A stretch of DNA of 45,362 nt from Hyphochytrium catenoides. Lineage: Eukaryota; Protista; Hyphochytriomycota. Made by a program: the position numbers and the translations under genes. Shown here one piece after another: positions 13,035 to 30,285 of this stretch; within the stretch, counting starts at the first letter, position 1; every line of letters begins with the position of its first letter. The stretch lies in the NCBI GenBank assembly GCA_900088475.1, contig FLMG01001637.1, forward strand, positions 1 to 45,362, given 5' to 3'. Under the pieces are notes generated by a model that was not told where the DNA came from, searched no databases, and saw only the letters and a list, made by a program, of their open reading frames with translations.

Positions 13035-14454
13035 CTATCCGGTCCTGCTCTTTCCTTTCTTTTTGGGGGGAGGGCGACGGCCTCCTTTTTTCTTCTTCAA
13101 AAAGCGCTCCACTTCTTCCCGAGCTTCACCATCTTCTTCGGGGGACGCTCGTTTCTTTCCTCTCCCTTGATTCTGATGCTCGCGTAGTTCTACTGCGGCA
13201 ACTCTTTGTGCCTCTGCAACTCTGTCTGCGAGCACTAGGACTGTCTCCTCTTCGCAGTTATAGCCAGGTAACTTCTTTCCTAATAAATGCTCAATTCGTT
13301 GATAGTGCTCCACGTCATATTGGGTCACGAATGAGATAGCCACACCCGCACGGCCGGCACGAGCTGTCCGGCCAACTCTATGGATATAATCCTTACCATG
13401 AGTGGGGATGTCAAAGTTGAGGACTACGTCCACTGAAGGAATATCCAGTCCTCGACTGGCTACATCAGTAGCAATGAGGATATTACGCTGCTTTGCTTTG
13501 AACTTGTTTAAGGCTCCAAGCCGCTTGGGTTGAGTCATCTGTCCATGGAGACAGATGGCTTCAAAGCCCAGACATCGCAGCAGAATGGCTATTCTCTGGG
13601 CATTGTTGCAAGTAGCAACAAAAATAAGTATCGATTGCCCCGCGAACTCGTTGCAGATATAAGCTAGGTAGCAGTCCTTGTACTTGGCCGGGATGAATAA
13701 ATACTGCTGCACCAAAGTCTCCGGGGTTGTGAACTTGTGGCTGATCTCCACTTTAACAGGATCGGTAAGTGAGGCTCGCTGAAGCTTTGCCACTTTGCCT
13801 GTCATTGTGGCACTGAAGAGATAGGTATTCCGCTCTTTAGGGATAAGCTGGAGAATCTTGTTGATCTCTTCCTCAAAGTCCATACTTAACATTCTGTCTG
13901 CCTCGTCTAAGACAAGGTATTTGATACTTCTTAGGGAGAATCCCTAGCAATAGGAGATGAGGGATTAGCTCTTTCTCTGCCATACTGTCGAAGACTTATG
14001 AGGCTTGCCTCACCTTTGTGTTCTCGAGGTGGTCGACCAGGCGCCCTGGAGTGGCAATGACAATGTGAGGCTTTTTGGCGAGGGCGACGGCCTGTGTCAT
14101 CATATCTATGCCTCCCACTACGCAGGCACATTTAACTCCGATAACTGCTCCCAATGCCTCAAATTGCTCAGAGATCTGGAAAGCCAACTCTCTCGTCGGG
14201 GCAAGCACGACGGCATACAACCGCTGGGGGTTCTCTAGTAGGTTCTGTAAGATGGGGATGGCAAAGGCTCCGGTTTTACCGGACCCAGTTTCGGCAAGTC
14301 CAATGATGTCTCTCCCTTCCAGTCCAGCTGGAATACATTGTGCCTGAATCTTGGTTGGGTGCGTCCAGCCAAGAGCTGCTGCTGCTTCACAAATAGAATC
14401 ATGAACACCTAAGCTCTTAAATGTCGCCGGTTCTTCTTCCTTACTGCCCGTCAT
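13035..14454 (-). CDS. DDX47: DEAD-box RNA helicase DDX47/Rrp3 (18S rRNA processing); 2 exons
   Basis: Motifs [31 protein letters not shown]|[25 protein letters not shown] and [13 protein letters not shown]. There is a single intron at about 13945-14013. Confidence 0.96.
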
Positions 14455-17396: not shown

Positions 17397-17848
17397 GGTC
17401 CTGGACTTGGTGAGGTGGCGACTAGGAAGCCTATAGTGAAAGGGCATTGTATGAGCCCACTTAGAAAGATGAGAATCAGACAAGAATCCTCTCATCTACT
17501 TGTCATCTGTTATTCAGTACATATCTATAATAAGACGCGAATTTAGCGCTTATATTAACGATATCATTGTACTGGTTCTGAACTGGATTTGATGAAGTCT
17601 TTGTTGACACATCTCAACCATGACACTGACAGCCGTGCTTTCAGCTGCGGTCATCTTCCTCTTCATCCGCCGTCACCGTGTCTCCAGGCCGCACCGACAT
17701 CTCCTCCCGCTGACTTCTATCATTCAAGCAATCAAGGGAAGCCTTGACAGTCAGGGCTACTAAGGGTCCTTGTGCACGAGTTGATGGGCACATCCAAAGG
17801 TGGCATGAGCGCCACGTAGGGTCAGAGAGAGAGAGACACTTGGGAGTC

Positions 17849-20375
17849 ATGGAGCAGTTCGTCCTGAAGCTGCCCGATGAGCTGGCGGCAAAGACCCGTG
17901 AGATGCTGGCGCAAGGGAAAGTTGAAGATGTTGACTATATTGCCCTGGGTGAGTGCATATTCTCTAGTGTCATAGGAGAACTAGGCCATGCTTTGGTCTC
18001 CTATCCTGTGGCAAGCTACCCAGCCCCCCAATCAATCCAAAAACTGCTCGCCAGCGAAGACGTCTGTTTGACCGATCGACTCTCCCATTTAAAGGCGATA
18101 ACAAGCACTTTGCATTTCGGTTTGCTGGCAAGGAGTACCCCGCTGTATTAGGTATCAGCCATACGTGATGCCGTGTTTCTCCTTCACTGGCTCTAACCAT
18201 GAATCTAAAAGCAAACCTTCCTTGCATCATCGAGACCCATAAAACCTATGACCACGCTACATACTACAAGAGCGGGGAAGTAGGGCAGGTGACTAATCAG
18301 TGTCTTGTTTGAGTCTCCTCCTGCTTTTGATATGTATGTGTACTTCGAATATGCCCCTCTTGTCCTATGTCAACATGGGCGATTAACTGTGAGAGTAAGG
18401 ATTTCGTCTCGTCGTCATCGCTTTCTGTTTGTCGACAACCCTAACTCTCTCCTCATCGGTTCCAGATGATCGTGGTGTTCATGGATGAAGAGGAAATGAA
18501 GAAATTTGAGCAAAGAGAGAAGGCAGACGGGCCAACGTTACCAAGTGGCTTGACGCCTCCCACAACCAACATAGTAAAGCGAAAGTGGGCAAAGACTGCA
18601 CAGCACAAGATAGGAACCTACGATGTAAGTCCTCACTGAAAGAGAGAAGTAAGGAAGCCGAGAGTGGGGAGGATATTACCTCGGAAGTGAAAGACAGGAA
18701 CTCCCAGGCTATCGGCAGCGGATGGGTTGGGTTACACAGGCGATTAAAGGGTTTTGATATCTCCGATGGGTAAACGTACAGACTGCGATAGTAGGAGGTG
18801 TTCCGCTCACTGAAGGACGCATACTAGAAGACTTTGTTGCACTAAAGAGAGTCCGGGAGTTCTACTAAAACGGAATGCTGCAGGCGGCAACCGTCGCAAA
18901 ATTAGAAGATGAGATTGAAAAGATGAAAGCAGGCCCAGTGGAGCAATCAGGTAGGGTCACGACAAACGGATAGGCTTCCACTAGGACTGAGGCCCCAATC
19001 TTCTCTTCTCATTCACAGAGGAGGAGCTTGTAAACTTCGAAGACTACATGGTGGATGCAGAGCATCCGCATGGCGTTGTTATCGACGATGAAGTTGCATT
19101 CTTGCAGCAACACCCTGAGGTACGGACAGCCATGCCTTACCTGACCCTCTTTACCTTTTGAAGCCTTCACTGCCCTTGCTATCCTCTCGCCGTAGCGTCC
19201 TCCGAGCACCACACTACGCTTTTGACCTCAAGAACGCTGACATTTTGCTGCAGATTCTTTTGAGGAAGCTGAGAGAGTCAATGACGGGAGAAGGCGGTCC
19301 GGGTCCCAGTCCGTCTTCACATGTCCCCAGAACAGGTGTTCGAGGGTCACCAGCTCCTTCTGTAGGTACAGGTGCTTCAGGTACATGACCTATAAGTTTG
19401 TTCGGATGAAAAGACTTATCTAGCTCCAGCTATGACATTTTCTCTTTTGGGCCCTACTCCCTTCCTCCTTGATAAGTTGATTTAGGGTTAGCGTTAGAGT
19501 ACATTGTGAAGAACCTCACGGAAGGAGACGACGCGTGCGTCACTTCTATCCACTGTACTTGACTTTAACTGCTTTGCAGTCTTTCTCATGTCTTCCAAAT
19601 AGAAAGAGTGCGTTGCGTTCTATGCTAACTCTAAGATTAAGGACCCATGCGAGCGTCGCCAGCGACGGTTTCCAGTCTATCTCAAAGAGCAGAGAAAGGT
19701 AGAGACGAGTCTTCGGATGATGAAATGGCTCGCGAGATCGAGGCCGAGCTACAGCTTGATGTTGGTGGTATAACAAGTAGGCCCACAACTCCCGGTCTGC
19801 CATCTGCTGGGACGTCACTGTCCATTCAAGGTGGGTGCACAAGGGGAAGTTAGCTGCATTAGTATAAACCCCGTGACAGCGACATGAAATTTGATCATCT
19901 TTGCCATTGCAGGCCAGGAGAACCAGATCATGGTCAAGCAACGCGAACTAGCACGGTTGCGTGAACGGCTGGTAGCGGAAGAGCGTCAGGTGGTGGAGAA
20001 GAGAGCTAAGGCTAATACTACGAATGCAGTTCTCAAGGTAGGGCAATCTTAGTTGATCGTCTTACAGCTAGCTTTCGCCCGCATGTCAACCCATCCCCGG
20101 GCTGACAACTGACAGTCATGACCCCAAATGCCCTGTTATACTCCCTCCACTAACAACTTCCTCTTGTTTCTCCCACCCCATCTCCTTCTATTGCCCGGTA
20201 GCCTCGGTTCGAAAAGAATCTTGAGACTGCCATTCAGGCGGCGGAAGCTACACGGAAGGCCATTCAAAAGGTAAACGATTATGCCTTCCAATCTCTGTTC
20301 TTGACCCTTCTGACTCCCTCTGGCTCTTGACTTATTTCTTTTGAGTAGCTGGAGCAGGAGCTTCGGTCGGCTTAA
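17849..20375 (+). CDS. TAF7: TFIID subunit 7 (TAFII55 N-terminal domain plus C-terminal coiled coil); about 11 exons
   Basis: MEQFVLKLP, YPAVL|ANLPCIIETHKTYD...YYKSGEVGQ|MIVV, SGLTPPTTNIVKRKW and C-terminal NAVLK|PRFEKNL. Stop TAA at 20373-20375. Confidence 0.87.
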
Positions 20376-20611
20376 AAATGCGATGGAGCGGATCTGAGGG
20401 GACTGGCTAAAATAACAGACTATTACAGGACAAAACTGCAAATACTTGCTATTGATGGGCTCATAAGAGTGACTGAGCCATAGGTTAATCTAGTGGAGGC
20501 GAAAAGACGGACAGAGGGACGGGGGGAGAGATATAGGAGCATCTGATTTGGAAGTCGGCTTAGGGCTGGAAATGATAAGCAAGCACACGACAAGCAAGGT
20601 GGACTTGGGCG

Positions 20612-23600
20612 TCAAGGCTTGCCCTGGAGCTGAGCAAGTAGGCGTGGGTTTTTAGAAGCGAGTTTGCGAAGGGCCTCCTTCCTCTTTTCTTCCAACATGG
20701 CACGCTTTGCTTCCTCGTCTTGAGTTGATGACGAGCAATGGTTGAAAGGAGTAAAGGACTGAAGATAAATGTACGGACAGTTGTGGCGGCAACAAATGAT
20801 GTGATGAGGAATTTGTCAGGTGGCTTTTCCCACATAAGCCAATGGTCAATACTACTACCCACCGAACTATTGCTGGGTAACTCCTTCTTGTTGTTCTGCT
20901 GCGTCGGACACGAACTTGGCGCCTGTACGTACATCGTTAAGGGGATTGAAATAATGAAAGGAACAGCTATTTTACCTTGAGAATTGTTCTGCTGCGCTCG
21001 ACATAACCGTCGTGCTGGTAAGTAAGGCACCGTACGCAGCGCGGGAGAGTAGCAAGTCGCAAAACGAGGAGGGTAAGTATCGGTCGCATTTGAGTTGTCT
21101 CTGAGACGCCCATACCGCTTGGAAGCTCCTAGGAGGAATATCCTGCCCTTTGGCAGCCTTATGTAAGTTGCCGGCTGTGGGCTTTGGCGTAAAGCACTTG
21201 CTAAGCCTGGTGGGGGCGATCTCCTCATTTGGCCCTTCAATTCTTGATTTATTAACTCTAAGGGGGATGGGACCGTATGAGACACATGATGGTTATCGGG
21301 GACAACAAAGACAGTGCTTTCAGAATGGCGACAATTCAGCAGAGGCATTGAGCTAAAGCAAAGCTGGAAATGGAACGTAGGTAAATCTACGAAGAGAGGG
21401 GCACACTAAGCTCGAAGTGAGTCTAGGATCGACACTTAAAGAGAACCACTGCCGCAAAGGCGGCGCGAACCTTACCTTGGAGTGAAGGGTGACAGTAGCT
21501 GGAAAGTATGTTTCTTGCTATGAAGCCTGTGCCTGTCTTGGTAGCAGCTCTGGCACATGAGGAAGGCCACACATTGTTGGCACTGGTAATAAGATAGAGT
21601 CGATCTCGAGTAAGCTGACGATGCAACGTGGCACCGGCTACACTTCAGATCATAATAAGCCGATGGCGAGTGAGTTGGACCTTGAAAGAGACGTCAGACA
21701 AGTCTTGAAATGGAGAACTTCATATCAGAGGAAGAATCAGTAGCAAATGATGAGAGGACCAGACAATGACAAAGACTATATTATCCAATAGCAGGAGAGT
21801 CGTTTTAGAAAATCGTACTAATAGAACAACTTCATATCAGACATTTGGCCGGAGTCCCTGCCAACTCACCATTGCCAGCTCCAGTAGATTCGTCAACGTC
21901 AATGTCTGGAGTGACTACCTCATCTCCCTCCACTACGTCGGCGCCACCTTCTAAAAGAGAGCGAACGATAGGCATTTGATCCATATTTAGTCGCCGCTCA
22001 GCTCCTCTTCGAACCCCAACAACAGGCGGAGAGGATATCAATGACTCTACATATACAGCCTAGGACATGCGCAGCGGTAAGTTTGGAGCGATATTTGATA
22101 AGACCTCCGAAAAGGAGGTTCATGAGGCCCGGAGCTGGATAAGATGGGCATAATGGAGAAACCAATCAACAGGTAACCGGGCTCAAAGACCATCGTAGTT
22201 TGTTTTAGAGCAAGACGCCTCAAGATCAGTAATAAACTTCATAGCATTTTTGCCTCAATCAACTGAGGGAACAAGCAGTTCTGACGGATTTCCAGCATAG
22301 GCCGCCGATAAGCAATCGAAAATGTTGCGCAACCTGGCACTCACTTGCATTGCTCTAAAATCGGGAGTTTCTTGATCCTCGGTCCCGTGATCAATGAAGC
22401 TGCCATCAATGCTATTGTTGTCATCGTCTTCTTCGTCATCGCCAGACTGAAGTAAGAGTGTACAAGTAGAGGCCGTGGATATTATCACCGAGGAGAAGGG
22501 TTTTGCGCATTGTTGGAGGATGAAACGATAACAGAGTATAAAGCCAATAACACATAGAGAAGAGGTGCAGCAGAATAGTTGTGTCTAAGCAATTGAATCA
22601 CTTGTTGGAAACAGCCATCCGCGAGGGTTGAGAAGGTAGATATACAGAGTGACCGTACATCAGAGCCGGAAACCTCAGCCTCCTCGTCGCCGTAAGTCTC
22701 GCCGATGACAGCTTTTCTCTTTTTCCAATCAACGTGGTCCGGCTTGCGTTTCCGTTTTTTACTTTCCCTTCGTTCCCCAACTTGTAGGGGCCTGTGATCT
22801 GAAATGTCCCTTCCTGATTCATCCTTCGCCTTCGCTTCTCCGGTTTTCTGCAACCTCTTCAACCTTTGTGGCCGGTCCACTAGCTGGTCAGCCTACGAAG
22901 CTAATACTTAGAACCGATTTAAAACACTGCAAGCTTCGAAAACGTTTTAAGGCCCAGATGGCAACCGAAGAAAACATCAGGAACTCAAATCTTGCGAGGG
23001 GAGGGAATACTGAAGTACCTTCTTTAGGCGCAAACCCTGTTTCTTGGTCGCCGGAGGCACCGCCCGAGCCCCTTGGGGTTCTGTGAGAACATTCGCGCAC
23101 AGCCATTAAGTAGCAGCCTCAAGCGACCACGTGGCTTTAGGATTCAGATACCTGGAGAGCCATCGTCGATCACTTGCCGCCTTTTCACTCCTCTAATAAC
23201 CTTGATAGGTGTGAAGTCTGGGCTATCTTCATTGTCTGAGATCCCGCCTTCATTGCCTCTTTTGTCGCCCATCTCTTGTGGGGCGGTTCTGATGCACTGC
23301 CACTCTCGGTTACCGTGATCTGAGCAACTTCGATCTTCGCACCGCACCATTTCATGAAACTTTCCCCCAGAATGATGTGGACAGTAGGCCTCGTAGAACA
23401 CTTCCCTTCTCGCAAGATCCTCTCTCTGCAGATCATGCGACAAGCAATGAATTCAAAAAAAAGGGCAACTCACTATTGCTAAATGTGTCCCGGGCATCAG
23501 ACGAGAGGTAAGCACGGAGGTAACCACTCTATCTCAGCCGCAAGAAAGGTACAGAGTATACCTCAACAAATTTCTGTCCATTGTCTAAACCACAGAGTGG

Positions 23601-26600
23601 ATGGAAGCAGTTGTCACAATCCTGCACTGCACAGTCAATGACGCAGCCGCGTTCGGTACGACAGACCGTGCACAGTGAGAGATGGGAACATTCTGGCTGT
23701 GGGAGAAATGTTGAACACTGTAAGCCCAGAAAGTTGACGCATAAATCCAAAGGCGTGGAATGGTCCTACCAGCTCTCTGACAGACAGAGGTCTAAGCTTT
23801 TCATCGAACTTTATGGCGGGCACCCACAGGGCACATACAACATGCACCCAATCTCCATCTGAAAAGACAAAGGAGTGTTATCAGTTAGAATATCGTGTGG
23901 AACTTGTAAGAGCCTCAAGCACCGCAATGCTTGTGATAGCGTACCTGCTGTAGCCTTAAGAGCTCCCCCAGGTCGTGGGCAAACTCGACACCGGGGAACA
24001 GGTGACAGTGGAGACTCATCCCGCTGGATACAAGCCTGGGATAGATTGAGAGCGAATTAGCAAATTGATAAAACTCATTTGAAAGCCGTGAAAGAGAAGA
24101 AGCATTGACTGTTAGCCACATTAGCGAAAAGTTCCACGTCGTGCTACCAGTCACATTCGCGAAGGGTTCGCACGTCGTACTAGAACCAGAAGAGACTCGT
24201 ACTGAGAGCCCTGCGAAAGAGGAAAGTGTGAAAGGATGGTACCTCGCAGAACCATGCGCCCTGTGGGACTGCATCAATACCTACATTGAGATAGCATGTT
24301 AGTTGCTATATATGTCTTGAAGCGCGGACTGGTAGCCCTTTACTTAACATATCGACCCTCTCACCCAGAGACAACCCCGGCCTCCCAACCCCTTACTCCC
24401 TTTCTGTCTAGCACGTTACCGTAGCAGTTTTGGTGCACTCCAATGTCGCAACGATCACAAAAAACGATCTCGTCATTCTCATAAGCTTCTCGGCCTCTAC
24501 AGACAGAGCAAAATTCGCTATCCAGATCGTCTACGGGCTTCACAGGATTGCCATTCATTGAGCGAGCGTTCTGGTCACACTCTATGGGCCATGGCGCAGG
24601 CTCTGCTACTGTAACGGCAAGAGAACTACTGGATGGACCCACAGGTTTCTCTGCGTTGAAGGAACGCTCACCTGGAAGAGCAAAAGAGTGAACAGGAGAA
24701 AGCTGGAGCTTATCCGATGCAAGGGATAGTCTGGGGCACTGTTCAGCTGTTGCCTGCCTTGAAAGCCCTATCAGGACTGCAGTCTCGACGTTAAGACGAG
24801 AAATTGACTCTACAGGCTTGACCGCAACTGACTCTACAGCCTTAGCCAAGATTGGAGAAGCTTGTCCCATTCCTTCAATCTGCTCTCCTGTGGAAGCTTG
24901 GGAAGCGGTCCAGGTCTTCTTTGCTTTCTGCTGCTGAATCTGGCAACTCTCAAATTCTGGAGCTATAACGCTAGCTGTGGTGTCGTGTGTAGCTTTCGGC
25001 GAGCTTGAATCCTTGGCATTCACTTGGCTAGTTCCTCTCTGCATAGCTGGCCAATTTTCCTTTTCATTGATTTCGGGAGGTCTTTCCACAGACCTTGGCT
25101 CATTTCGTGACGGGAGGGGCTCAGCCGAAAAGAAAGGGTTAGGAGGTGGTGGCCTCAAAAGGGCTGCACATCTGCGAGCTGGCTGGCAAGGAGTATTGCC
25201 TCCAGTCAGGAAGGGAGACAAAAAGGTGTCAAAAGGAAGAAAGGTGGTGTCTTCGCTGGACTTCCACTTCTTCGTAGCCTTGTTTGGGCTCTTCCGTGTA
25301 GCACGATGTTCTAGTCCTGCCAATGGTGTTGTTTCATTGCCCAACCCCCGTCGATCTTCCTCCATTTGGTGATCTGGCAATATTTTGGCATTTGACCTTG
25401 TCCACCTCTCAGCAGCTCGGACGAGGGGAGGATCCACAGATTCTACTGTGCTCTCAATCCCCCGACCACGCATCCCTACCACTGAGTCGGAGACAGGGGA
25501 TCCCAGCTGGTGAACTGTTGGAAGCTGAGGTTCATGACTCTTTGCGCTCAGTGCCGGGTGCTTCCCCCTATCTCCTGCTTTATCTTCGACAAACGTATCC
25601 CCGTCATTGTCCGTTCTGTCCTCATCAGAATCTGAATCTAGGGTGACGGGAGCTAGGCAACGCTGGCGAGAAGGTGCGTTTTCCTCTCTCTTCTTTGTCA
25701 GCGTTTGCATGCAAGCCTCCATCTCTTTCTCTTCGTACATCACTAACCATTCTTCATCCCGAATGAACTGGACGAGGTGTCGCAGGGCAGACGCGCTAAA
25801 AGATTAAGAGTACGTGAATGACATGAAGGGGCGCAGGATAGAACGAAACAAAGGAGGAGGAGACTCACGAGAGTGTGACTGGCGCGACTGCTTACTAAGA
25901 AAACAGAACATCAAAAGGGCAATTCTGCCGATCTCAGGAGAGAGTAAGAGCACAGTGCCCATGAGATGATTAGACAAAATCAGACGTAAAGTCAACGCAT
26001 AGACGTCAGAGAAATGAGCGTTCTCCACGCTTCTCACAGACCTTGCAGAATGCCCGACTCTGCACGTAGGAGCATCGTTAAGGACATTTCCCAAATAAGC
26101 TGTTACGCTGAGTGGAGGTGGCCGGGGGTCCGCTTTCAGCATCTGCAAAGCCCGCTCTTCTTCAACTGCATCCAAGCCCCAGTCCTGCAGGCGATTGCTC
26201 CTTTTACCTCCAAGGCTGACGTTAGGTCCCTGTTTGCTACTGCTCCGTTTCTTCCCTCTACCACCCACCTAAGAATTAGGCGTTAGATCCAAAACAAGGA
26301 AAGTTTAAGTTTGCTGCCGAGCTGCTGCTGCCGCTTACTTGTGAAAGATGCCACTCTGATATTTCAATCCGCTGCTCCACCAACTCTGGCTGAATATGGT
26401 CTGGGATCATCCTTGGCGAATGAGCATAGAGATTAAACTGTCCCAGAATATCAGTTAAGTATGAGTATCAAAGGCCGCACGCATAGAAGTCAGATTCTTT
26501 GTGCAATATATGAGCCTTGATGTGTGCTGGATAGGAATCAAAGAAGAAACACCGCTTTCCACACGAAGAGACAGATGGTATCGTAATAACAAAAATTGAT

Positions 26601-29600
26601 AGGGTCAACATTTGTGGCCTTGTAACAGCTCCAAGTACCTTCGAGCACCGTAGGGCGCCTGAAATGCTCTTGGCAGAGCTTGCACTCGCTTTCAACTTTT
26701 TCTCTTCTGCACCCTCTGTAACCAGGATCATTACCTGTGGTCCACAGTATAGGGTACTCTCTTAGAAGAGAAACAATGGGTCCATTTTGGGAAAAGAGAA
26801 CACTGAGTAGCTCGACAACGCGTAAACTTGAGTACAATAGAGGAAAGAAAAGGCGCCCGAAGGGGGAGGAAAGGAGTGAGGAAGGAAGGAGGAAAAAGAA
26901 GGGAAAGTCTACCTTGCCATGCCTCTTCCTTCCTGTTCTGCCCATTCTTTGTATCATTCGGGTGGCAGAGGTAAGTGCGTCAAAGGATATGATCAGATCC
27001 ACTTCGCCAATATCCAGCCCCTCTTCTGCAATGCAGGTCGCAACCAGCACATTGTACTCTCCCTTCTTAAAGGATTCAATGATCTGCTGTTGCTCTTTCT
27101 GCGTTTGCCCCTTAACTGTTGCCTTCTTTTGCTGCTCTTCGTAGAATTCATTGTCATCAAATGTCCCTCCGTGGCCCGCCTTTGGTTTCTTTAGACGAGT
27201 ACCCTGTCCTACGAACTCCTTGGGCTTGATGAGTGGATGGGGTGACTTATTCAACGTATCGATGATCTCCTGCACGCTGTCTCGGAACTGACTGAACACT
27301 ATCACTTTCGTGTCCGACGAAGTTGAGCTCTGCTACCAGCAACCGCGGACTTTGTAAGCATACAATAGAAGGAACGGAAAGCTAGATAGTTAAGAGCCGA
27401 TAGTTAATCGTAAACGAGTGGTCATTGGACATAATGGGCCTCGTGACCATTACACCAGAAAGTTATGGCCACTCAGCTCTCCCAGCCTTGCAGTAGAGTA
27501 GGACACGCTCACCGTATGCCCGCTTTCCATGTCGTCCCGATTCCTTGCTTTTCTGACAAAGTGCTCGACCAGGATCTCCCTGAGTTTGAACAGTTTCGGA
27601 TGTGCAGAACGCCCACTCCCAAAACTCTTAACCTAGGAGGGATTGCAATGGAAGCATGTTAGACGAGGGAGATAGTACAGAATCCGTCAGCCATCGCCCA
27701 GGAGGCAAAGATAGGAATACAGCTTAGGGGTGCTCAACCTCCTCCATTAGCATCTTGAATTGTTCAGTCTGTGTCAGTTGTAGCTTTCCCCTGGAACCTT
27801 GGCCTCTACGAGTCTGCTCCATCATATTTTCTAAATATTGGCGTAAACTTCCAACTCCATGGCTCAAGAGGAGCTTTCGGCCATGCACAAGCGAGGTCAA
27901 CAACCCCAGGTCGGCCTCTATAGCTCCAATGCTGAAATTGTAACATGTAAAGAGAGCCAAGAAGAGTCAAAGAGGCGAGTCAGAATGGAAGGTCCAAGTC
28001 TTGACAGGTGAACAAGGGATTCAGAGGGCTGACAAAAAAGATACAAATAAACTTCAAAGCTAATCAGGGTCAGCAGGCGACTAACTCTAGGCCTGGCAAG
28101 TGGTGAAAGAAAGGGGGCCCTACTTTGCATTGTTGACACAGTTCGGCGGGTTCGTCCTTAGCCTCTCTTTTAGGAAAAGAAGCTGCTGGGTATTGATTGC
28201 GGATGGCTCTTTAGTGAAAAGGACGCCAAAGGCAGAGAGGCGAGAGATAGCCGGTCTCATAATCTCAGCATAAAGATTGCTCACTCGCTGGATCTCAGGG
28301 GTCAGGGTGCACCTAATCACAATCTCCTGTGTGTGAGCGAAGCAGTGGCGAGTGAGTTTGGCTAGTGAGCATCAAGAAAAAGGAGCTATACTCTGGTCAA
28401 GCAACTGTGCTACACTTGCTAAAACCCAGTATCCCATATTGTGAATTGAGCATTAAGTCGGTGTGACTCAATGGGTGTCCTAACGGCACCTGTCTTTGCT
28501 TCATATGCTGCCGGACATCAGGATCGTTGGCATCCTTGCATTCTATGTGAGATATCAGAAGGTTGTTCAGGACATTCTGTACCACCTCCGCCTTGGACCC
28601 AGGCGTAGCACTCAAGGCTAGAACTCTAAAAAATCTATGTCGCGCGAGAATGAGCCGGATGACGGCGCAGTATGCGTAGTTGCCCGTGGCTCTGTGGGCC
28701 TCGTCAATTACGAGGCACACGAATTGCTTGGGGTCACAGATTCCCTTTTCTAGGTCGTTCTGCAGACTTTGAGGAGTGCAATAGAATACCCGCCTGCTTT
28801 TCCAGAGTCGAGCTCTTTCTGTTGGATGTACTGAACCCTACGTAAGGAGCAATAATATCAAGAAGAGTCACCACCAAGTGCCAACGACACTCTTCAGTCC
28901 CGGGTTAGGTTGAGAGAAGAGGACGTAAAACTGGGGGACATTTAGGGATAATAGAATTCGATGAGACGATGAGGGATGAAAAGAGCCAGTACTCGCGGTC
29001 AGAGTAAGAACTTCGTTTGGACCAAACCTGCAGTTCAGCAGTGTCTTCTTGTGGGATGGCGGTAATGTTATGACAGGCTTCGATTTGTTGGGACACCAGC
29101 GGCTTCGTTGGCGCCATAAAGCAGACCTTCCCTCTGGGAAACCAGCGATAATAGTTGAACATGACCACCGCCGCAATCAACGTTTTACCAAGCCCCGTAG
29201 GGAGGGAAACGAGAGTGTTTCTGAAAAGGGCCTAAGAGACAAAATGAGCCCGGCACATACTGTTCACCACGCTTTGCTTCTCTCAAAGACCTTCCTTGCT
29301 ACCTACGGTCTTTCTGGTACCATTTGCTGGCACCTGGTGCGACGCATCGTCATACCATATCTCAGGTTCGTATCATGAGTACCGCCTACAACCTCTTAGA
29401 CCGTTCCTTACCCTATGATGTCCGGGCTACTTCTTCGCACGTACTAAAACAGAGAGTGCCTTACCTTCTCAACTATTTGCTGCTGATAAGCCCGGACTGG
29501 GTAGTTTGTGGGATAGATCCAGTACTCCGCTGCTTCCTCGTCACAGATGGAGAATTCATTTGGCGACATTGGATGTTCATCATCAGCACTCTCTTGCCGT

Positions 29601-30285
29601 TGCGCTTTGCGAGGAACACTTGAAAGCGTGTTCTCTTGTATGCGTTGAGCTACATTCTCCTTGCCTTCTCTCTGTCGCTGGAGTTCGTCTGCCCTTGTGG
29701 GTCTCCCAACATGATGCCGTGGGACGTTAAGAGCTCGGTCCTCTAAAGGAGCGAAGGGCCTCTCCGCCCTTTGAGGCCTTGAGCGGCCATCCAACATTTC
29801 TTCAGGAGCTATCCTGTTATCTCTTCGTCCTACATCTGCACCACCAGGTGCTGCTTGTGCCTTATCTAATGTGTTAGGCTTCTTTACCCTCCCCACGCCG
29901 AACATATTGGTCTCCTTAACAACGAAGGTGCCGTTTTCTTTTGACTGAGGTTTGTAGCCAATCGACCAACCAGCTCCACCATCGTTAGGGTTGACAGCCC
30001 TGATTTTCCCGCACATAAGACAGGAGGGGTTGCCGACAGGATTGTGATAGGTACACGTAGGACAGCTCCAGATGGAGCTGTTGCAGACTCCATGTTGGAC
30101 TGGTGTTCCGCGCACACTCTCTGGTCTGGAGCTGCGGGGTTCTTGATGCTTCGATATGAAGGATTGCTCAATGGCGTCAACTGTCGTGAGATCGATCACA
30201 CTCCAATCCACCTGTACAGCTTGTCAGTTAGTATAGATTATGATGATCCTGCCAGATTCCATACCTCATCCGGAAAGTCTGCCAT
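20612..30285 (-). CDS. FANCM: FANCM/Mph1-family DEAH helicase/translocase with extra NZF, PZP and ZZ zinc fingers and a C-terminal RPA-binding-like helix; more than 20 exons
   Basis: Motifs [92 protein letters not shown] and [20 protein letters not shown] motif and an acidic MM3-like motif ([10 protein letters not shown]...GSFID...DFRAMQ|AVYVESL) follow. Exon phases join continuously to TGA at 20612-20614. The 3' exons are less certain than the helicase exons. Confidence 0.88.
21508..21642 (-). other. ZZ-type zinc finger in a FANCM 3' exon (absent from the ORF track)
   Basis: Exon 21680-21476 translates to [52 protein letters not shown], i.e. CxxC..CxxC..CxxC..HxxxH. Confidence 0.8.
23372..24510 (-). 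other. PHD finger-Zn knuckle-PHD (PZP/ePHD) module in FANCM
   Basis: [31 protein letters not shown]|[12 protein letters not shown]|[60 protein letters not shown]. This matches the AF10/JADE/BRPF-type pattern. Confidence 0.92.
30008..30070 (-). other. RanBP2/NZF-type zinc finger near the FANCM N-terminus
   Basis: [21 protein letters not shown] fits W-x-C-x2-C-x3-N-x6-C-x2-C exactly. Confidence 0.9.

What the first reader, a model, noticed from the sequence alone, without database searches (positions are those of the whole stretch)
20612..30285. All-in-one fork remodeler: FANCM fused to ubiquitin-, histone- and RPA-reading modules
Seen in sequence: one phase-consistent spliced frame gives NZF - DEAH helicase - PZP - acidic MM3-like motif - ZZ - C-terminal helix, with no ERCC4/HhH2 domain. 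Established: human FANCM and yeast Mph1/Fml1 do not carry these fingers. In animals, NZF-mediated ubiquitin binding recruits ZRANB3 and an RPA32-binding helix recruits SMARCAL1. Inference: this lineage may have merged several stalled-fork recruitment signals (ubiquitinated PCNA, RPA-ssDNA, histone H3 tail state) onto one translocase, replacing FAAP24/core-complex targeting. This is the best candidate for an undescribed system in the window.
Basis: partly seen in the sequence, partly recalled or inferred. Interest (0 to 1): 0.82.

Follow-up and report, generated by a model that had tools for sequence, protein, structure and literature searches.

The report
FANCM helicase with built-in reader domains
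This is one real, intron-rich gene for the DNA-repair motor FANCM that also carries ubiquitin-, histone- and probably RPA-binding modules; the design is shared by all water moulds, is visible in public databases, and has apparently never been described or studied.

Summary
On the minus strand, 22 GT-AG exons (30285 down to 21478) join without a stop into 1,824 residues. In order they encode an NZF zinc finger, an intact DEAH translocase, a 480-codon linker, a PZP, the conserved FANCM MM3 acidic module and a divergent ZZ finger.

It is one gene, not two:
- Exon borders coincide with tblastn borders of oomycete proteins.
- The PZP is flanked on both sides by FANCM-specific sequence.
- The Phytophthora capsici orthologue holds the same modules in one uninterrupted ORF.

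The last join, from the ZZ exon to the C-terminal helix (20651-20719), is phase-possible by many routes but unproven. No RNA run was listed. No ERCC4/HhH2 domain lies in the window.

About 30 named oomycete species already carry this architecture in public databases, auto-named FANCM. Saprolegniales carry the ZZ as well. Those orthologues keep the ERCC4/HhH2 domain, so there the reader modules were added to it rather than swapped for it. Their helix profile best matches SMARCAL1's RPA32C-binding peptide.

I found no paper describing this architecture. The scan also noted the PZP on this same window (s1-345863).

Verdict: a real gene and an undescribed but database-visible FANCM variant, of moderate interest.

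The parts
30265..30285 (-). Exon 1: ATG plus 6 codons, followed by a 53-nt intron with GTATGG donor and TACTAAC branch site
   Evidence: Read from the sequence; in phase with exon 2. No homology support for this start codon.
29465..30211 (-). Exon 2: N-terminal region with the NZF finger (29999-30070; W-x-C-x2-C-T-Y-x-N...C-x-M-C) and the start of the helicase (Q-motif region)
   Evidence: Pfam Zn_ribbon_RanBP E=1e-4. Aligned with orthologue NZFs; the profile matches HOIP/HOIL-1L/Npl4/TAB2 NZFs at E about 4e-8.
26339..29231 (-). Exons 3-10: DEAH translocase core (GLGKT, DEAH, SAT and QRMGRTGR all intact) and its conserved C-terminal extension
   Evidence: Pfam DEAD and Helicase_C. 60-66% identity to oomycete FANCM proteins. 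tblastn borders equal exon borders.
24420..26268 (-). Exons 11-12: end of the FANCM-specific post-helicase region, then a long low-complexity linker running into the first PHD finger
   Evidence: An oomycete motif (VGYSTRS..L.SLVRKINGxEE) is split by intron 11 (RVGHSA | ..[13 protein letters not shown]). A 480-codon open frame lies beyond all 200 random sequences.
23372..24510 (-). PZP (PHD, zinc knuckle, PHD) spread over exons 12-17, with all Cys/His ligands present
   Evidence: Pfam PHD and zf-HC5HC2H on exons. Orthologue PZP HMM E=3.5e-42 on the spliced model. Orthologue PZP vs PDB: JADE1, JADE3, BRPF1, AF10 at E 1e-36 to 1e-30.
23019..23371 (-). Rest of exon 17 and exon 18: basic/acidic linker
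   Evidence: Phase-consistent GT-AG joins; no homology support for exon 18.
21870..22892 (-). Exons 19-21: FANCM MM3 module (RLKRL ... EEAEVSGSD ... acidic ... GSFID ... FRAMQAVYVESL)
   Evidence: Orthologue HMM E=2.5e-9. The same module is in plant, chytrid and animal FANCM. Guide RNAs that delimit mouse MM3 translate to EVSGEDV and KDSFTDE. The motif continues across the 285-nt intron 20, as in oomycete MRAIYARSL.
21478..21680 (-). Exon 22: divergent ZZ-type zinc finger; in-frame TAA at 21474-21472 overlaps the only donor
   Evidence: ZZ HMM from Saprolegniales and P0030: E=3e-7, the only significant piece of 1,866. tblastn with Aphanomyces ZZ. Pfam ZZ sub-threshold.
20759..21477 (-). Unresolved 3' stretch: one or more exons, or 3'UTR. 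It includes a 281-codon open frame (21405-20563) that is phase-compatible with the ZZ exon donor through the acceptor at 21353
   Evidence: 3,231 phase-consistent one- or two-exon routes. The open frame is longer than 95% of random window maxima. No homologue found.
20612..20758 (-). Proposed last exon with the basic helix (20651-20719: ..[22 protein letters not shown]..) and TGA at 20614-20612
   Evidence: Best-scoring of 1,866 six-frame pieces for the orthologues' helix HMM, but only E=2.2. Same order as in Aphanomyces (ZZ, then helix).

Best explanation
The region is a single gene for the FANCM/Mph1/Fml1-family branch-point translocase of an oomycete-related stramenopile. It has an architecture that arose before oomycetes diversified.

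Shown:
- An intact DEAH motor.
- The ancestral FANCM MM3 module.
- Three added zinc modules in the same reading frame: an N-terminal NZF, a PZP inserted between the motor and MM3, and a ZZ after MM3.

Inferred mechanism. The motor remodels stalled forks and D-loops as FANCM does elsewhere, but it is brought and held there by several weak contacts on one polypeptide:
- The NZF binds ubiquitin. It has the T-aromatic...Met contact pattern of ubiquitin-binding NZFs. The target would plausibly be ubiquitinated PCNA or another fork mark.
- The PZP, and perhaps the ZZ, bind the unmodified histone H3 tail and DNA of nearby nucleosomes.
- A C-terminal basic helix binds the RPA32 C-terminal domain on ssDNA, as in SMARCAL1 and XPA/Rad14.

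In oomycetes these modules sit alongside the ERCC4/HhH2 domain. In the window's copy that domain is not present within 45 kb, so here the readers may carry more of the targeting.
For: One gene:
- 22 exons, 5,472 nt, no stop.
- Exon borders equal tblastn borders.
- BLASTP of the model is collinear with P. capsici and A. stellatus proteins, including PZP and ZZ.
- FANCM-specific sequence lies on both sides of the PZP.
- The P. capsici orthologue is one uninterrupted ORF, L001 2842-9462.

Family:
- The best hits of 1.84 billion representatives are oomycete FANCM proteins of 1,881-2,303 aa.
- The same Pfam set is found in them.

Modules:
- NZF profile vs ubiquitin-binding NZFs, E about 4e-8.
- PZP vs JADE1/BRPF1/AF10, E 1e-36.
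- ZZ of A. stellatus vs ZZZ3/HERC2, E 5e-10; window ZZ E=3e-7.
- Helix profile: the top PDB hit is the SMARCAL1 peptide bound to RPA32C, with the Rad14 N-terminus third.

ERCC4/HhH2 is present in orthologues and absent from the window.
Against: - No transcript evidence: no RNA run was listed.
- The window's NZF and ZZ are below Pfam cut-offs.
- The window's helix is weak (E=2.2), replaces the near-invariant Asn of the oomycete/SMARCAL1 motif with Lys, and is joined to the ZZ exon only by unresolved exons.
- An in-frame stop directly follows the ZZ exon.
- All binding functions are inferred from homology; none was tested.
- Absence of ERCC4/HhH2 from one 45-kb window does not prove absence from the genome.
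Confidence: 0.75

Rival explanations
1. Two or more adjacent genes: a FANCM helicase gene, and a separate PZP/ZZ chromatin-reader gene wrongly joined by the reader.
For: No RNA data. The linker is long and low-complexity. Some database models of relatives are split: Aphanomyces astaci fragments and 900-aa Phytophthora megakarya models.
Against: - A conserved FANCM motif is split by intron 11, and the next exon runs open for 480 codons into the PHD finger.
- The FANCM-specific MM3 module lies downstream of the PZP.
- P. capsici has everything in one uninterrupted ORF.
- About 30 species show the same single-protein architecture.
Confidence: 0.04
2. The gene ends at the TAA right after the ZZ exon (21474-21472). 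The 'RPA-binding' helix at 20651-20719 would then be a chance match in the 3'UTR or intergenic DNA.
For: - The in-frame stop overlaps the only donor of the ZZ exon.
- The helix scores only E=2.2 and lacks the conserved Asn.
- No unique route joins the two.
- No homologue was found for the intervening open frame.
Against: - The helix exon is the top-scoring of 1,866 six-frame pieces, and it lies on the right strand, in the right order, within 900 nt. That is roughly a 1-in-150 coincidence.
- The ZZ-then-helix order is conserved in Aphanomyces.
- A 281-codon open frame that is phase-compatible with the ZZ donor follows.
- Codon bias favours the helix frame at 20800-20700.
Confidence: 0.3
3. The ERCC4/HhH2 domain has not been lost. 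It is encoded elsewhere in this genome, as a split gene or behind an assembly break, so targeting through a FAAP24-like partner persists here as in oomycetes.
For: All complete oomycete orthologues keep the domain. Only 45 kb of this genome was visible.
Against: No match to a 39-sequence HMM in any frame of the window. The reading frame with the helix ends in TGA with no usable donor before it.
Confidence: 0.3
4. A decaying pseudogene whose exons only look joinable.
For: No expression data; divergent NZF and ZZ.
Against: 22 exons in phase without a single stop. All helicase motifs and all PZP zinc ligands are intact. A 480-codon open linker.
Confidence: 0.03

Closest known systems
Oomycete proteins auto-annotated 'Fanconi anemia group M protein'. 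Examples: Phytophthora capsici KAG1690078.1, Plasmopara halstedii XP_024584363.1, Aphanomyces stellatus Aste57867_9069, P. infestans 'PHD-zinc-finger like domain'.
   Same: Same order of modules: NZF, DEAH motor, long linker, PZP, MM3, (ZZ in Saprolegniales), basic helix. 60-66% identity in the motor; collinear BLASTP.
   Different: They are intronless or nearly so (one ORF in P. capsici), against at least 22 exons here. They keep the C-terminal ERCC4/HhH2 domain and repeated PSFxLL motifs, both absent here. Peronosporales lack the ZZ.
Human FANCM, and yeast Mph1 / Fml1
   Same: DEAH branch-point translocase core. MM3 module shared with human and other animal FANCM. By established knowledge, fork reversal and D-loop dissociation.
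   Different: Among the animal, plant and fungal FANCM hits retrieved here, none shows a PZP, and ZZ occurs only in oomycete-like proteins and one unnamed EukProt entry, P0018. An NZF is otherwise seen only in the ascidian Styela clava. Animal FANCMs have the Pfam FANCM-MHF_bd and ERCC4 families, which are not detected here. Human FANCM uses a PIP box, MM1 and MM2 for its partners.
ZRANB3
   Same: A fork-remodelling motor carrying an NZF. By established knowledge that NZF binds K63-polyubiquitinated PCNA.
   Different: ZRANB3 is an SNF2-family motor with an HNH nuclease and PIP/APIM boxes. Only the type of finger is shared, not descent. Ubiquitin binding was not tested here.
SMARCAL1 (and XPA/Rad14) RPA32C-binding helix
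   Same: The oomycete motif R-I-E-A-N-R-L-K-A-L-E-K-L aligns with SMARCAL1 K-I-E-E-N-R-Q-K-A-L of PDB 4MQV (E=0.01) and with the Rad14 N-terminus.
   Different: The motif is C-terminal rather than N-terminal. The window's version ([12 protein letters not shown]) is weaker. SMARCAL1 is an SNF2 annealing helicase.
JADE1/JADE3, BRPF1 and AF10 PZP domains
   Same: Full-length PZP match at E 1e-36 to 1e-30. These bind the unmodified H3 tail, and DNA.
   Different: There the PZP sits in acetyltransferase or DOT1L scaffold proteins, not in a DNA motor.

Membership tests
FANCM/Mph1/Fml1/Hef SF2 translocases | Helicase core with motif I GxGKT, motif II DEAH, motif III SAT and motif VI QxxGRxGR | tested here: met
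   PTGLGKT, DEAH, SATPG and [10 protein letters not shown] are read in the spliced model. Pfam DEAD and Helicase_C.
FANCM/Mph1/Fml1/Hef SF2 translocases | Closest relatives are FANCM orthologues | tested here: met
   Top hits of 1.84 billion representatives are oomycete FANCM proteins, followed by plant, fungal and animal FANCM.
FANCM/Mph1/Fml1/Hef SF2 translocases | MM3 acidic module C-terminal to the motor | tested here: met
   HMM E=2.5e-9 on the model. Same module in plant, chytrid, cnidarian, mollusc and fish FANCM. Its boundaries match the mouse MM3 deletion guides.
FANCM/Mph1/Fml1/Hef SF2 translocases | C-terminal ERCC4-like plus HhH2 domain (FAAP24 interface; present in animal FANCM and archaeal Hef, absent in yeast Mph1 and plant FANCM) | tested here: not met
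   No match in any frame of the window. Present in oomycete orthologues. This feature is not universal in the family, so it does not exclude membership.
FANCM/Mph1/Fml1/Hef SF2 translocases | MHF1/2-binding region (Pfam FANCM-MHF_bd) | tested here: inconclusive
   PF16783 is listed for animal FANCMs but for no oomycete orthologue. A conserved post-helicase stretch exists, but its function is unknown.
NZF (Npl4-type, ubiquitin-binding RanBP2 zinc finger) | W-x-C-x2-C-x3-N-x6-C-x2-C scaffold | tested here: met
   [10 protein letters not shown]-x6-C-L-M-C at 29999-30070. The profile with orthologues matches HOIP, HOIL-1L, Npl4, TAB2/3 and TRABID NZFs at E 4e-8 to 1e-5. Pfam on the window alone gives 21.8 bits, below the cut-off of 27.
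NZF (Npl4-type, ubiquitin-binding RanBP2 zinc finger) | Ubiquitin-contact signature: Thr-aromatic after the first CxxC, and a hydrophobic residue inside the second CxxC (rule recalled from the literature) | tested here: met
   T-Y and C-L-M-C in the window; T-L and C-x-V-C in oomycetes. Binding itself was not tested.
PZP (PHD, zinc knuckle, PHD) histone/DNA readers | PHD1, Cys2HisCys knuckle and atypical PHD2 in one unit, with all ligands | tested here: met
   Pfam PHD and zf-HC5HC2H. HMM E=3.5e-42 over residues 1318-1489. Orthologue vs JADE1/BRPF1/AF10 PZP structures over the full length.
ZZ zinc finger | Two cross-braced zinc sites: CxxC...CxxC...CxxC...HxxxH | tested here: inconclusive
   Ligands are readable (C-S-R-C, C-Q-Q-C, C-Q-S-C, H..H), but the first loop is enlarged. 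Pfam ZZ gives 11.2 bits against a cut-off of 21.4. The orthologue-ZZ HMM gives E=3e-7, aligned only to the C-terminal half.
RPA32C-binding helix (SMARCAL1 / XPA-Rad14 / UNG2 / TIPIN type) | Amphipathic basic helix of the E-x-N-R-x-K/R-A-L type that docks on the RPA32 winged helix | tested here: inconclusive
   Oomycete profile: the best PDB hit is the SMARCAL1 peptide of 4MQV at E=0.01, with Rad14 at E=1.2. Window motif: top-ranked piece, but E=2.2 and Asn replaced by Lys.

The most novel reading that the evidence does not exclude
In this oomycete relative, FANCM has shed the ERCC4/HhH2 heterodimerisation domain that its oomycete cousins keep. It would then be aimed at stalled forks only by reader modules on the same chain: NZF for ubiquitin, PZP and ZZ for the H3 tail, and a helix for RPA32C. 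That would make it a natural FAAP24-independent, self-targeting FANCM that combines the recruitment logic of ZRANB3 and SMARCAL1.
Probability: 0.3. Interest if true: 0.6.

Novelty: new variant of a known kind. Interest (0 to 1): 0.5.

Why it matters
FANCM, SMARCAL1 and ZRANB3 are parallel fork remodellers in animals, each with its own recruitment signal. Human FANCM and SMARCAL1 are synthetically lethal (bioRxiv 10.1101/2024.02.27.582393).

A whole eukaryotic lineage, the oomycetes and their relatives, including major crop and fish pathogens, puts a ubiquitin finger, two histone-tail readers and an RPA32C-type helix on FANCM itself. This is a natural experiment on how recruitment signals can be combined on one motor. 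It directly suggests that FANCM reads chromatin state at forks in these organisms.

The MM3 module, whose function is still unknown in humans, turns out to be conserved from animals to plants to stramenopiles. Here it sits next to the readers, which may help assign it a role. The gene is also a clean example of an intronless oomycete gene whose counterpart in a sister lineage has more than 20 introns.

Tried and rejected
- RNA evidence: the look-up of sequencing runs listed no run, so read laying could not be used.
- Own-genome protein model: none in the 1.84-billion representative library; best identity 66%.
- Codon-bias scoring of the 3' stretch: too weak to choose a route.
- Homologues of the 281-codon open frame 21405-20563: none.
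- Pfam on the oomycete C-terminal domain: nothing. It was recognised only by a profile search against PDB.
- PSFxLL repeats of oomycete orthologues as a possible MM2/RMI-binding motif: no PDB match, and absent from the window model. Dropped.
- Identity of GCA_024449665.1 (the P0020 source): no paper found.
- The neighbouring plus-strand ORFs (17744-20052) looked TAF7-like to me, but Pfam gave nothing, so I make no claim about them.
- Literature searches for FANCM with oomycete, Phytophthora, PHD finger or stramenopiles found no description of this architecture.
- Presence of ZRANB3, SMARCAL1, FAAP24 and MHF1/2 in this genome could not be checked, because only the window is readable.
Full report
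**What is there.** The window is eukaryotic and intron-rich. I read the minus strand between 30400 and 20300 and the stop-to-stop frames. From these I derived 22 exons from ATG 30285 to 21478. Every intron is GT..AG, 53-285 nt long, often with a CTAAC-like branch site. The joined sequence is 5,472 nt with no stop and encodes 1,824 residues.

Pfam on single exons finds the following:
- A RanBP2/NZF finger: 21.8 bits, below the cut-off.
- DEAD.
- Helicase_C: 72 bits.
- PHD.
- zf-HC5HC2H.

The helicase motifs GLGKT, DEAH, SAT and QRMGRTGR are intact, and so are all zinc ligands of the PZP.

**Relatives.** A helicase exon was searched against 1.84 billion representative proteins. It found no protein of this genome. 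It did find a tight group at 57-66% identity and 1,881-2,303 residues. These are oomycete proteins from Phytophthora capsici, Plasmopara halstedii, Lagenidium giganteum, Aphanomyces astaci and Albugo candida, plus unnamed assemblies.

Their Pfam content is Zn_ribbon_RanBP, DEAD, Helicase_C, PHD and zf-HC5HC2H in one chain. Wider searches list the same set in about 30 named oomycete species. Saprolegniales (Aphanomyces, Saprolegnia, Thraustotheca) add a Pfam ZZ. UniProt names these proteins 'Fanconi anemia group M protein'.

Other agents' notes call this genome an oomycete relative. My hits agree, but I did not identify the organism.

**One gene or several.** Four lines of evidence say one.
1. 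tblastn of seven orthologues against the window ends exactly at my exon borders and is collinear from the NZF to the PZP, and with Aphanomyces to the ZZ. BLASTP of the spliced model gives the same picture.
2. A motif that is contiguous in oomycetes (VGYSTRS..L.SLVRKINGxEE) is split by intron 11. The exon that follows stays open for 480 codons until the first PHD finger. No random 45-kb sequence out of 200 reached that length.
3. The acidic module downstream of the PZP is FANCM's own MM3. An HMM from the oomycete proteins finds it in plant, chytrid, Cryptococcus, cnidarian, mollusc and fish FANCM. The guide RNAs used to delete mouse MM3 translate to EVSGEDV and KDSFTDE, which are the two ends of the module. 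The PZP therefore lies between two FANCM-specific parts.
4. In P. capsici the whole protein is one uninterrupted ORF of 2,206 codons.

**The modules.**
- *NZF.* The window has W-x-C-x2-C-T-Y-x-N...C-L-M-C. Aligned with the orthologues, the profile matches the ubiquitin-binding NZFs of HOIP, HOIL-1L, Npl4, TAB2/3 and TRABID.
- *PZP.* The orthologue matches the H3-tail-bound PZPs of JADE1, JADE3, BRPF1 and AF10 over its full length.
- *ZZ.* Pfam ZZ is sub-threshold on the window. An HMM from the orthologues' ZZ hits the exon at E=3e-7, the only significant piece of 1,866, and aligns mostly to the second half. The A. stellatus ZZ is closest to ZZZ3 and HERC2, both H3-tail readers.
- *Helix.* Oomycetes share R-I-E-A-N-R-L-K-A-L-E-K-L. 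Its profile's best PDB match is the SMARCAL1 peptide crystallised on RPA32C (4MQV, E=0.01), with the Rad14 N-terminus third. The window's candidate ([12 protein letters not shown], 20651-20719) is the best-scoring piece in the window, on the right strand and in the right order. It scores only E=2.2.

**The 3' end.** The ZZ exon's only donor overlaps an in-frame TAA (21474-21472). Between it and the helix exon there are thousands of phase-consistent routes. One uses a 281-codon open frame (21405-20563), which is longer than the longest open frame in 95% of the random sequences. That frame has no homologue. Codon bias is too weak to decide. No RNA run was listed. I put the chance that the helix is translated at about 0.65.

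**ERCC4/HhH2.** The oomycete C-termini, aligned as A1, match the human FANCM ERCC4/HhH2 domain solved with FAAP24 (4M6W, 4BXO, 9HJO; E about 1e-7). Nothing like it exists in any frame of the window, by either the 7-sequence or the 39-sequence HMM. For the family, however, the readers were added to the FAAP24-type module rather than exchanged for it.

**Wider spread.** Outside named oomycetes, helicase+PZP occurs in:
- an AT-rich unknown organism, P0030, which also has MM3 and ZZ;
- a genome assembly, GCA_024449665.1 (P0020);
- environmental clusters.

The Lagenidium model lacks the PZP. An ascidian FANCM also has a RanBP-type finger.

**Novelty.** Five searches of the held literature found no description of this architecture. 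It is visible only as automatic annotation. I therefore class it as an undescribed variant of a known family, real and conserved, with its mechanism inferred from the modules only.

Noticed in passing
window 13314-13685 (-): A second, unrelated SF2 helicase gene: Pfam Helicase_C at 105 bits. It cross-hits weakly with FANCM queries in tblastn.
   Followed up: partly
window 20563-21405 (-): A 281-codon open frame with no homologue. It overlaps the proposed last exon in another frame and is longer than the maximum of 95% of random 45-kb sequences. It may be part exon and part chance, or an alternative C-terminus.
   Followed up: partly
oomycete orthologues, e.g. P0002 1768 and 1891, P0280 933-1868: One to four copies of an acidic-then-PSFxLL motif flank the RPA-type helix in most oomycete FANCM proteins. 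No match to any solved structure, and absent from the window model.
   Followed up: partly
P0030 (Logan assembly, 1,588 aa): An AT-rich unidentified organism has DEAD, Helicase_C, a marginal DEK_C, PZP, MM3 and ZZ in one protein. Its motor is closest to oomycete FANCM (48% identity).
   Followed up: partly
P0004 (Lagenidium giganteum DAZ96450.1): This orthologue has the NZF, motor, MM3, helix and ERCC4/HhH2, but no PHD or PZP hit. This is either a loss or a gene-model gap.
   Followed up: no
P0343 (Styela clava FANCM-like): An ascidian FANCM also lists Pfam Zn_ribbon_RanBP, suggesting an independent NZF-FANCM fusion in a tunicate.
   Followed up: no
window 20612-30285 versus L001 2842-9462: The gene has at least 21 introns here, while the P. 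capsici orthologue is a single ORF. This is a sharp contrast in intron density between sister lineages.
   Followed up: partly
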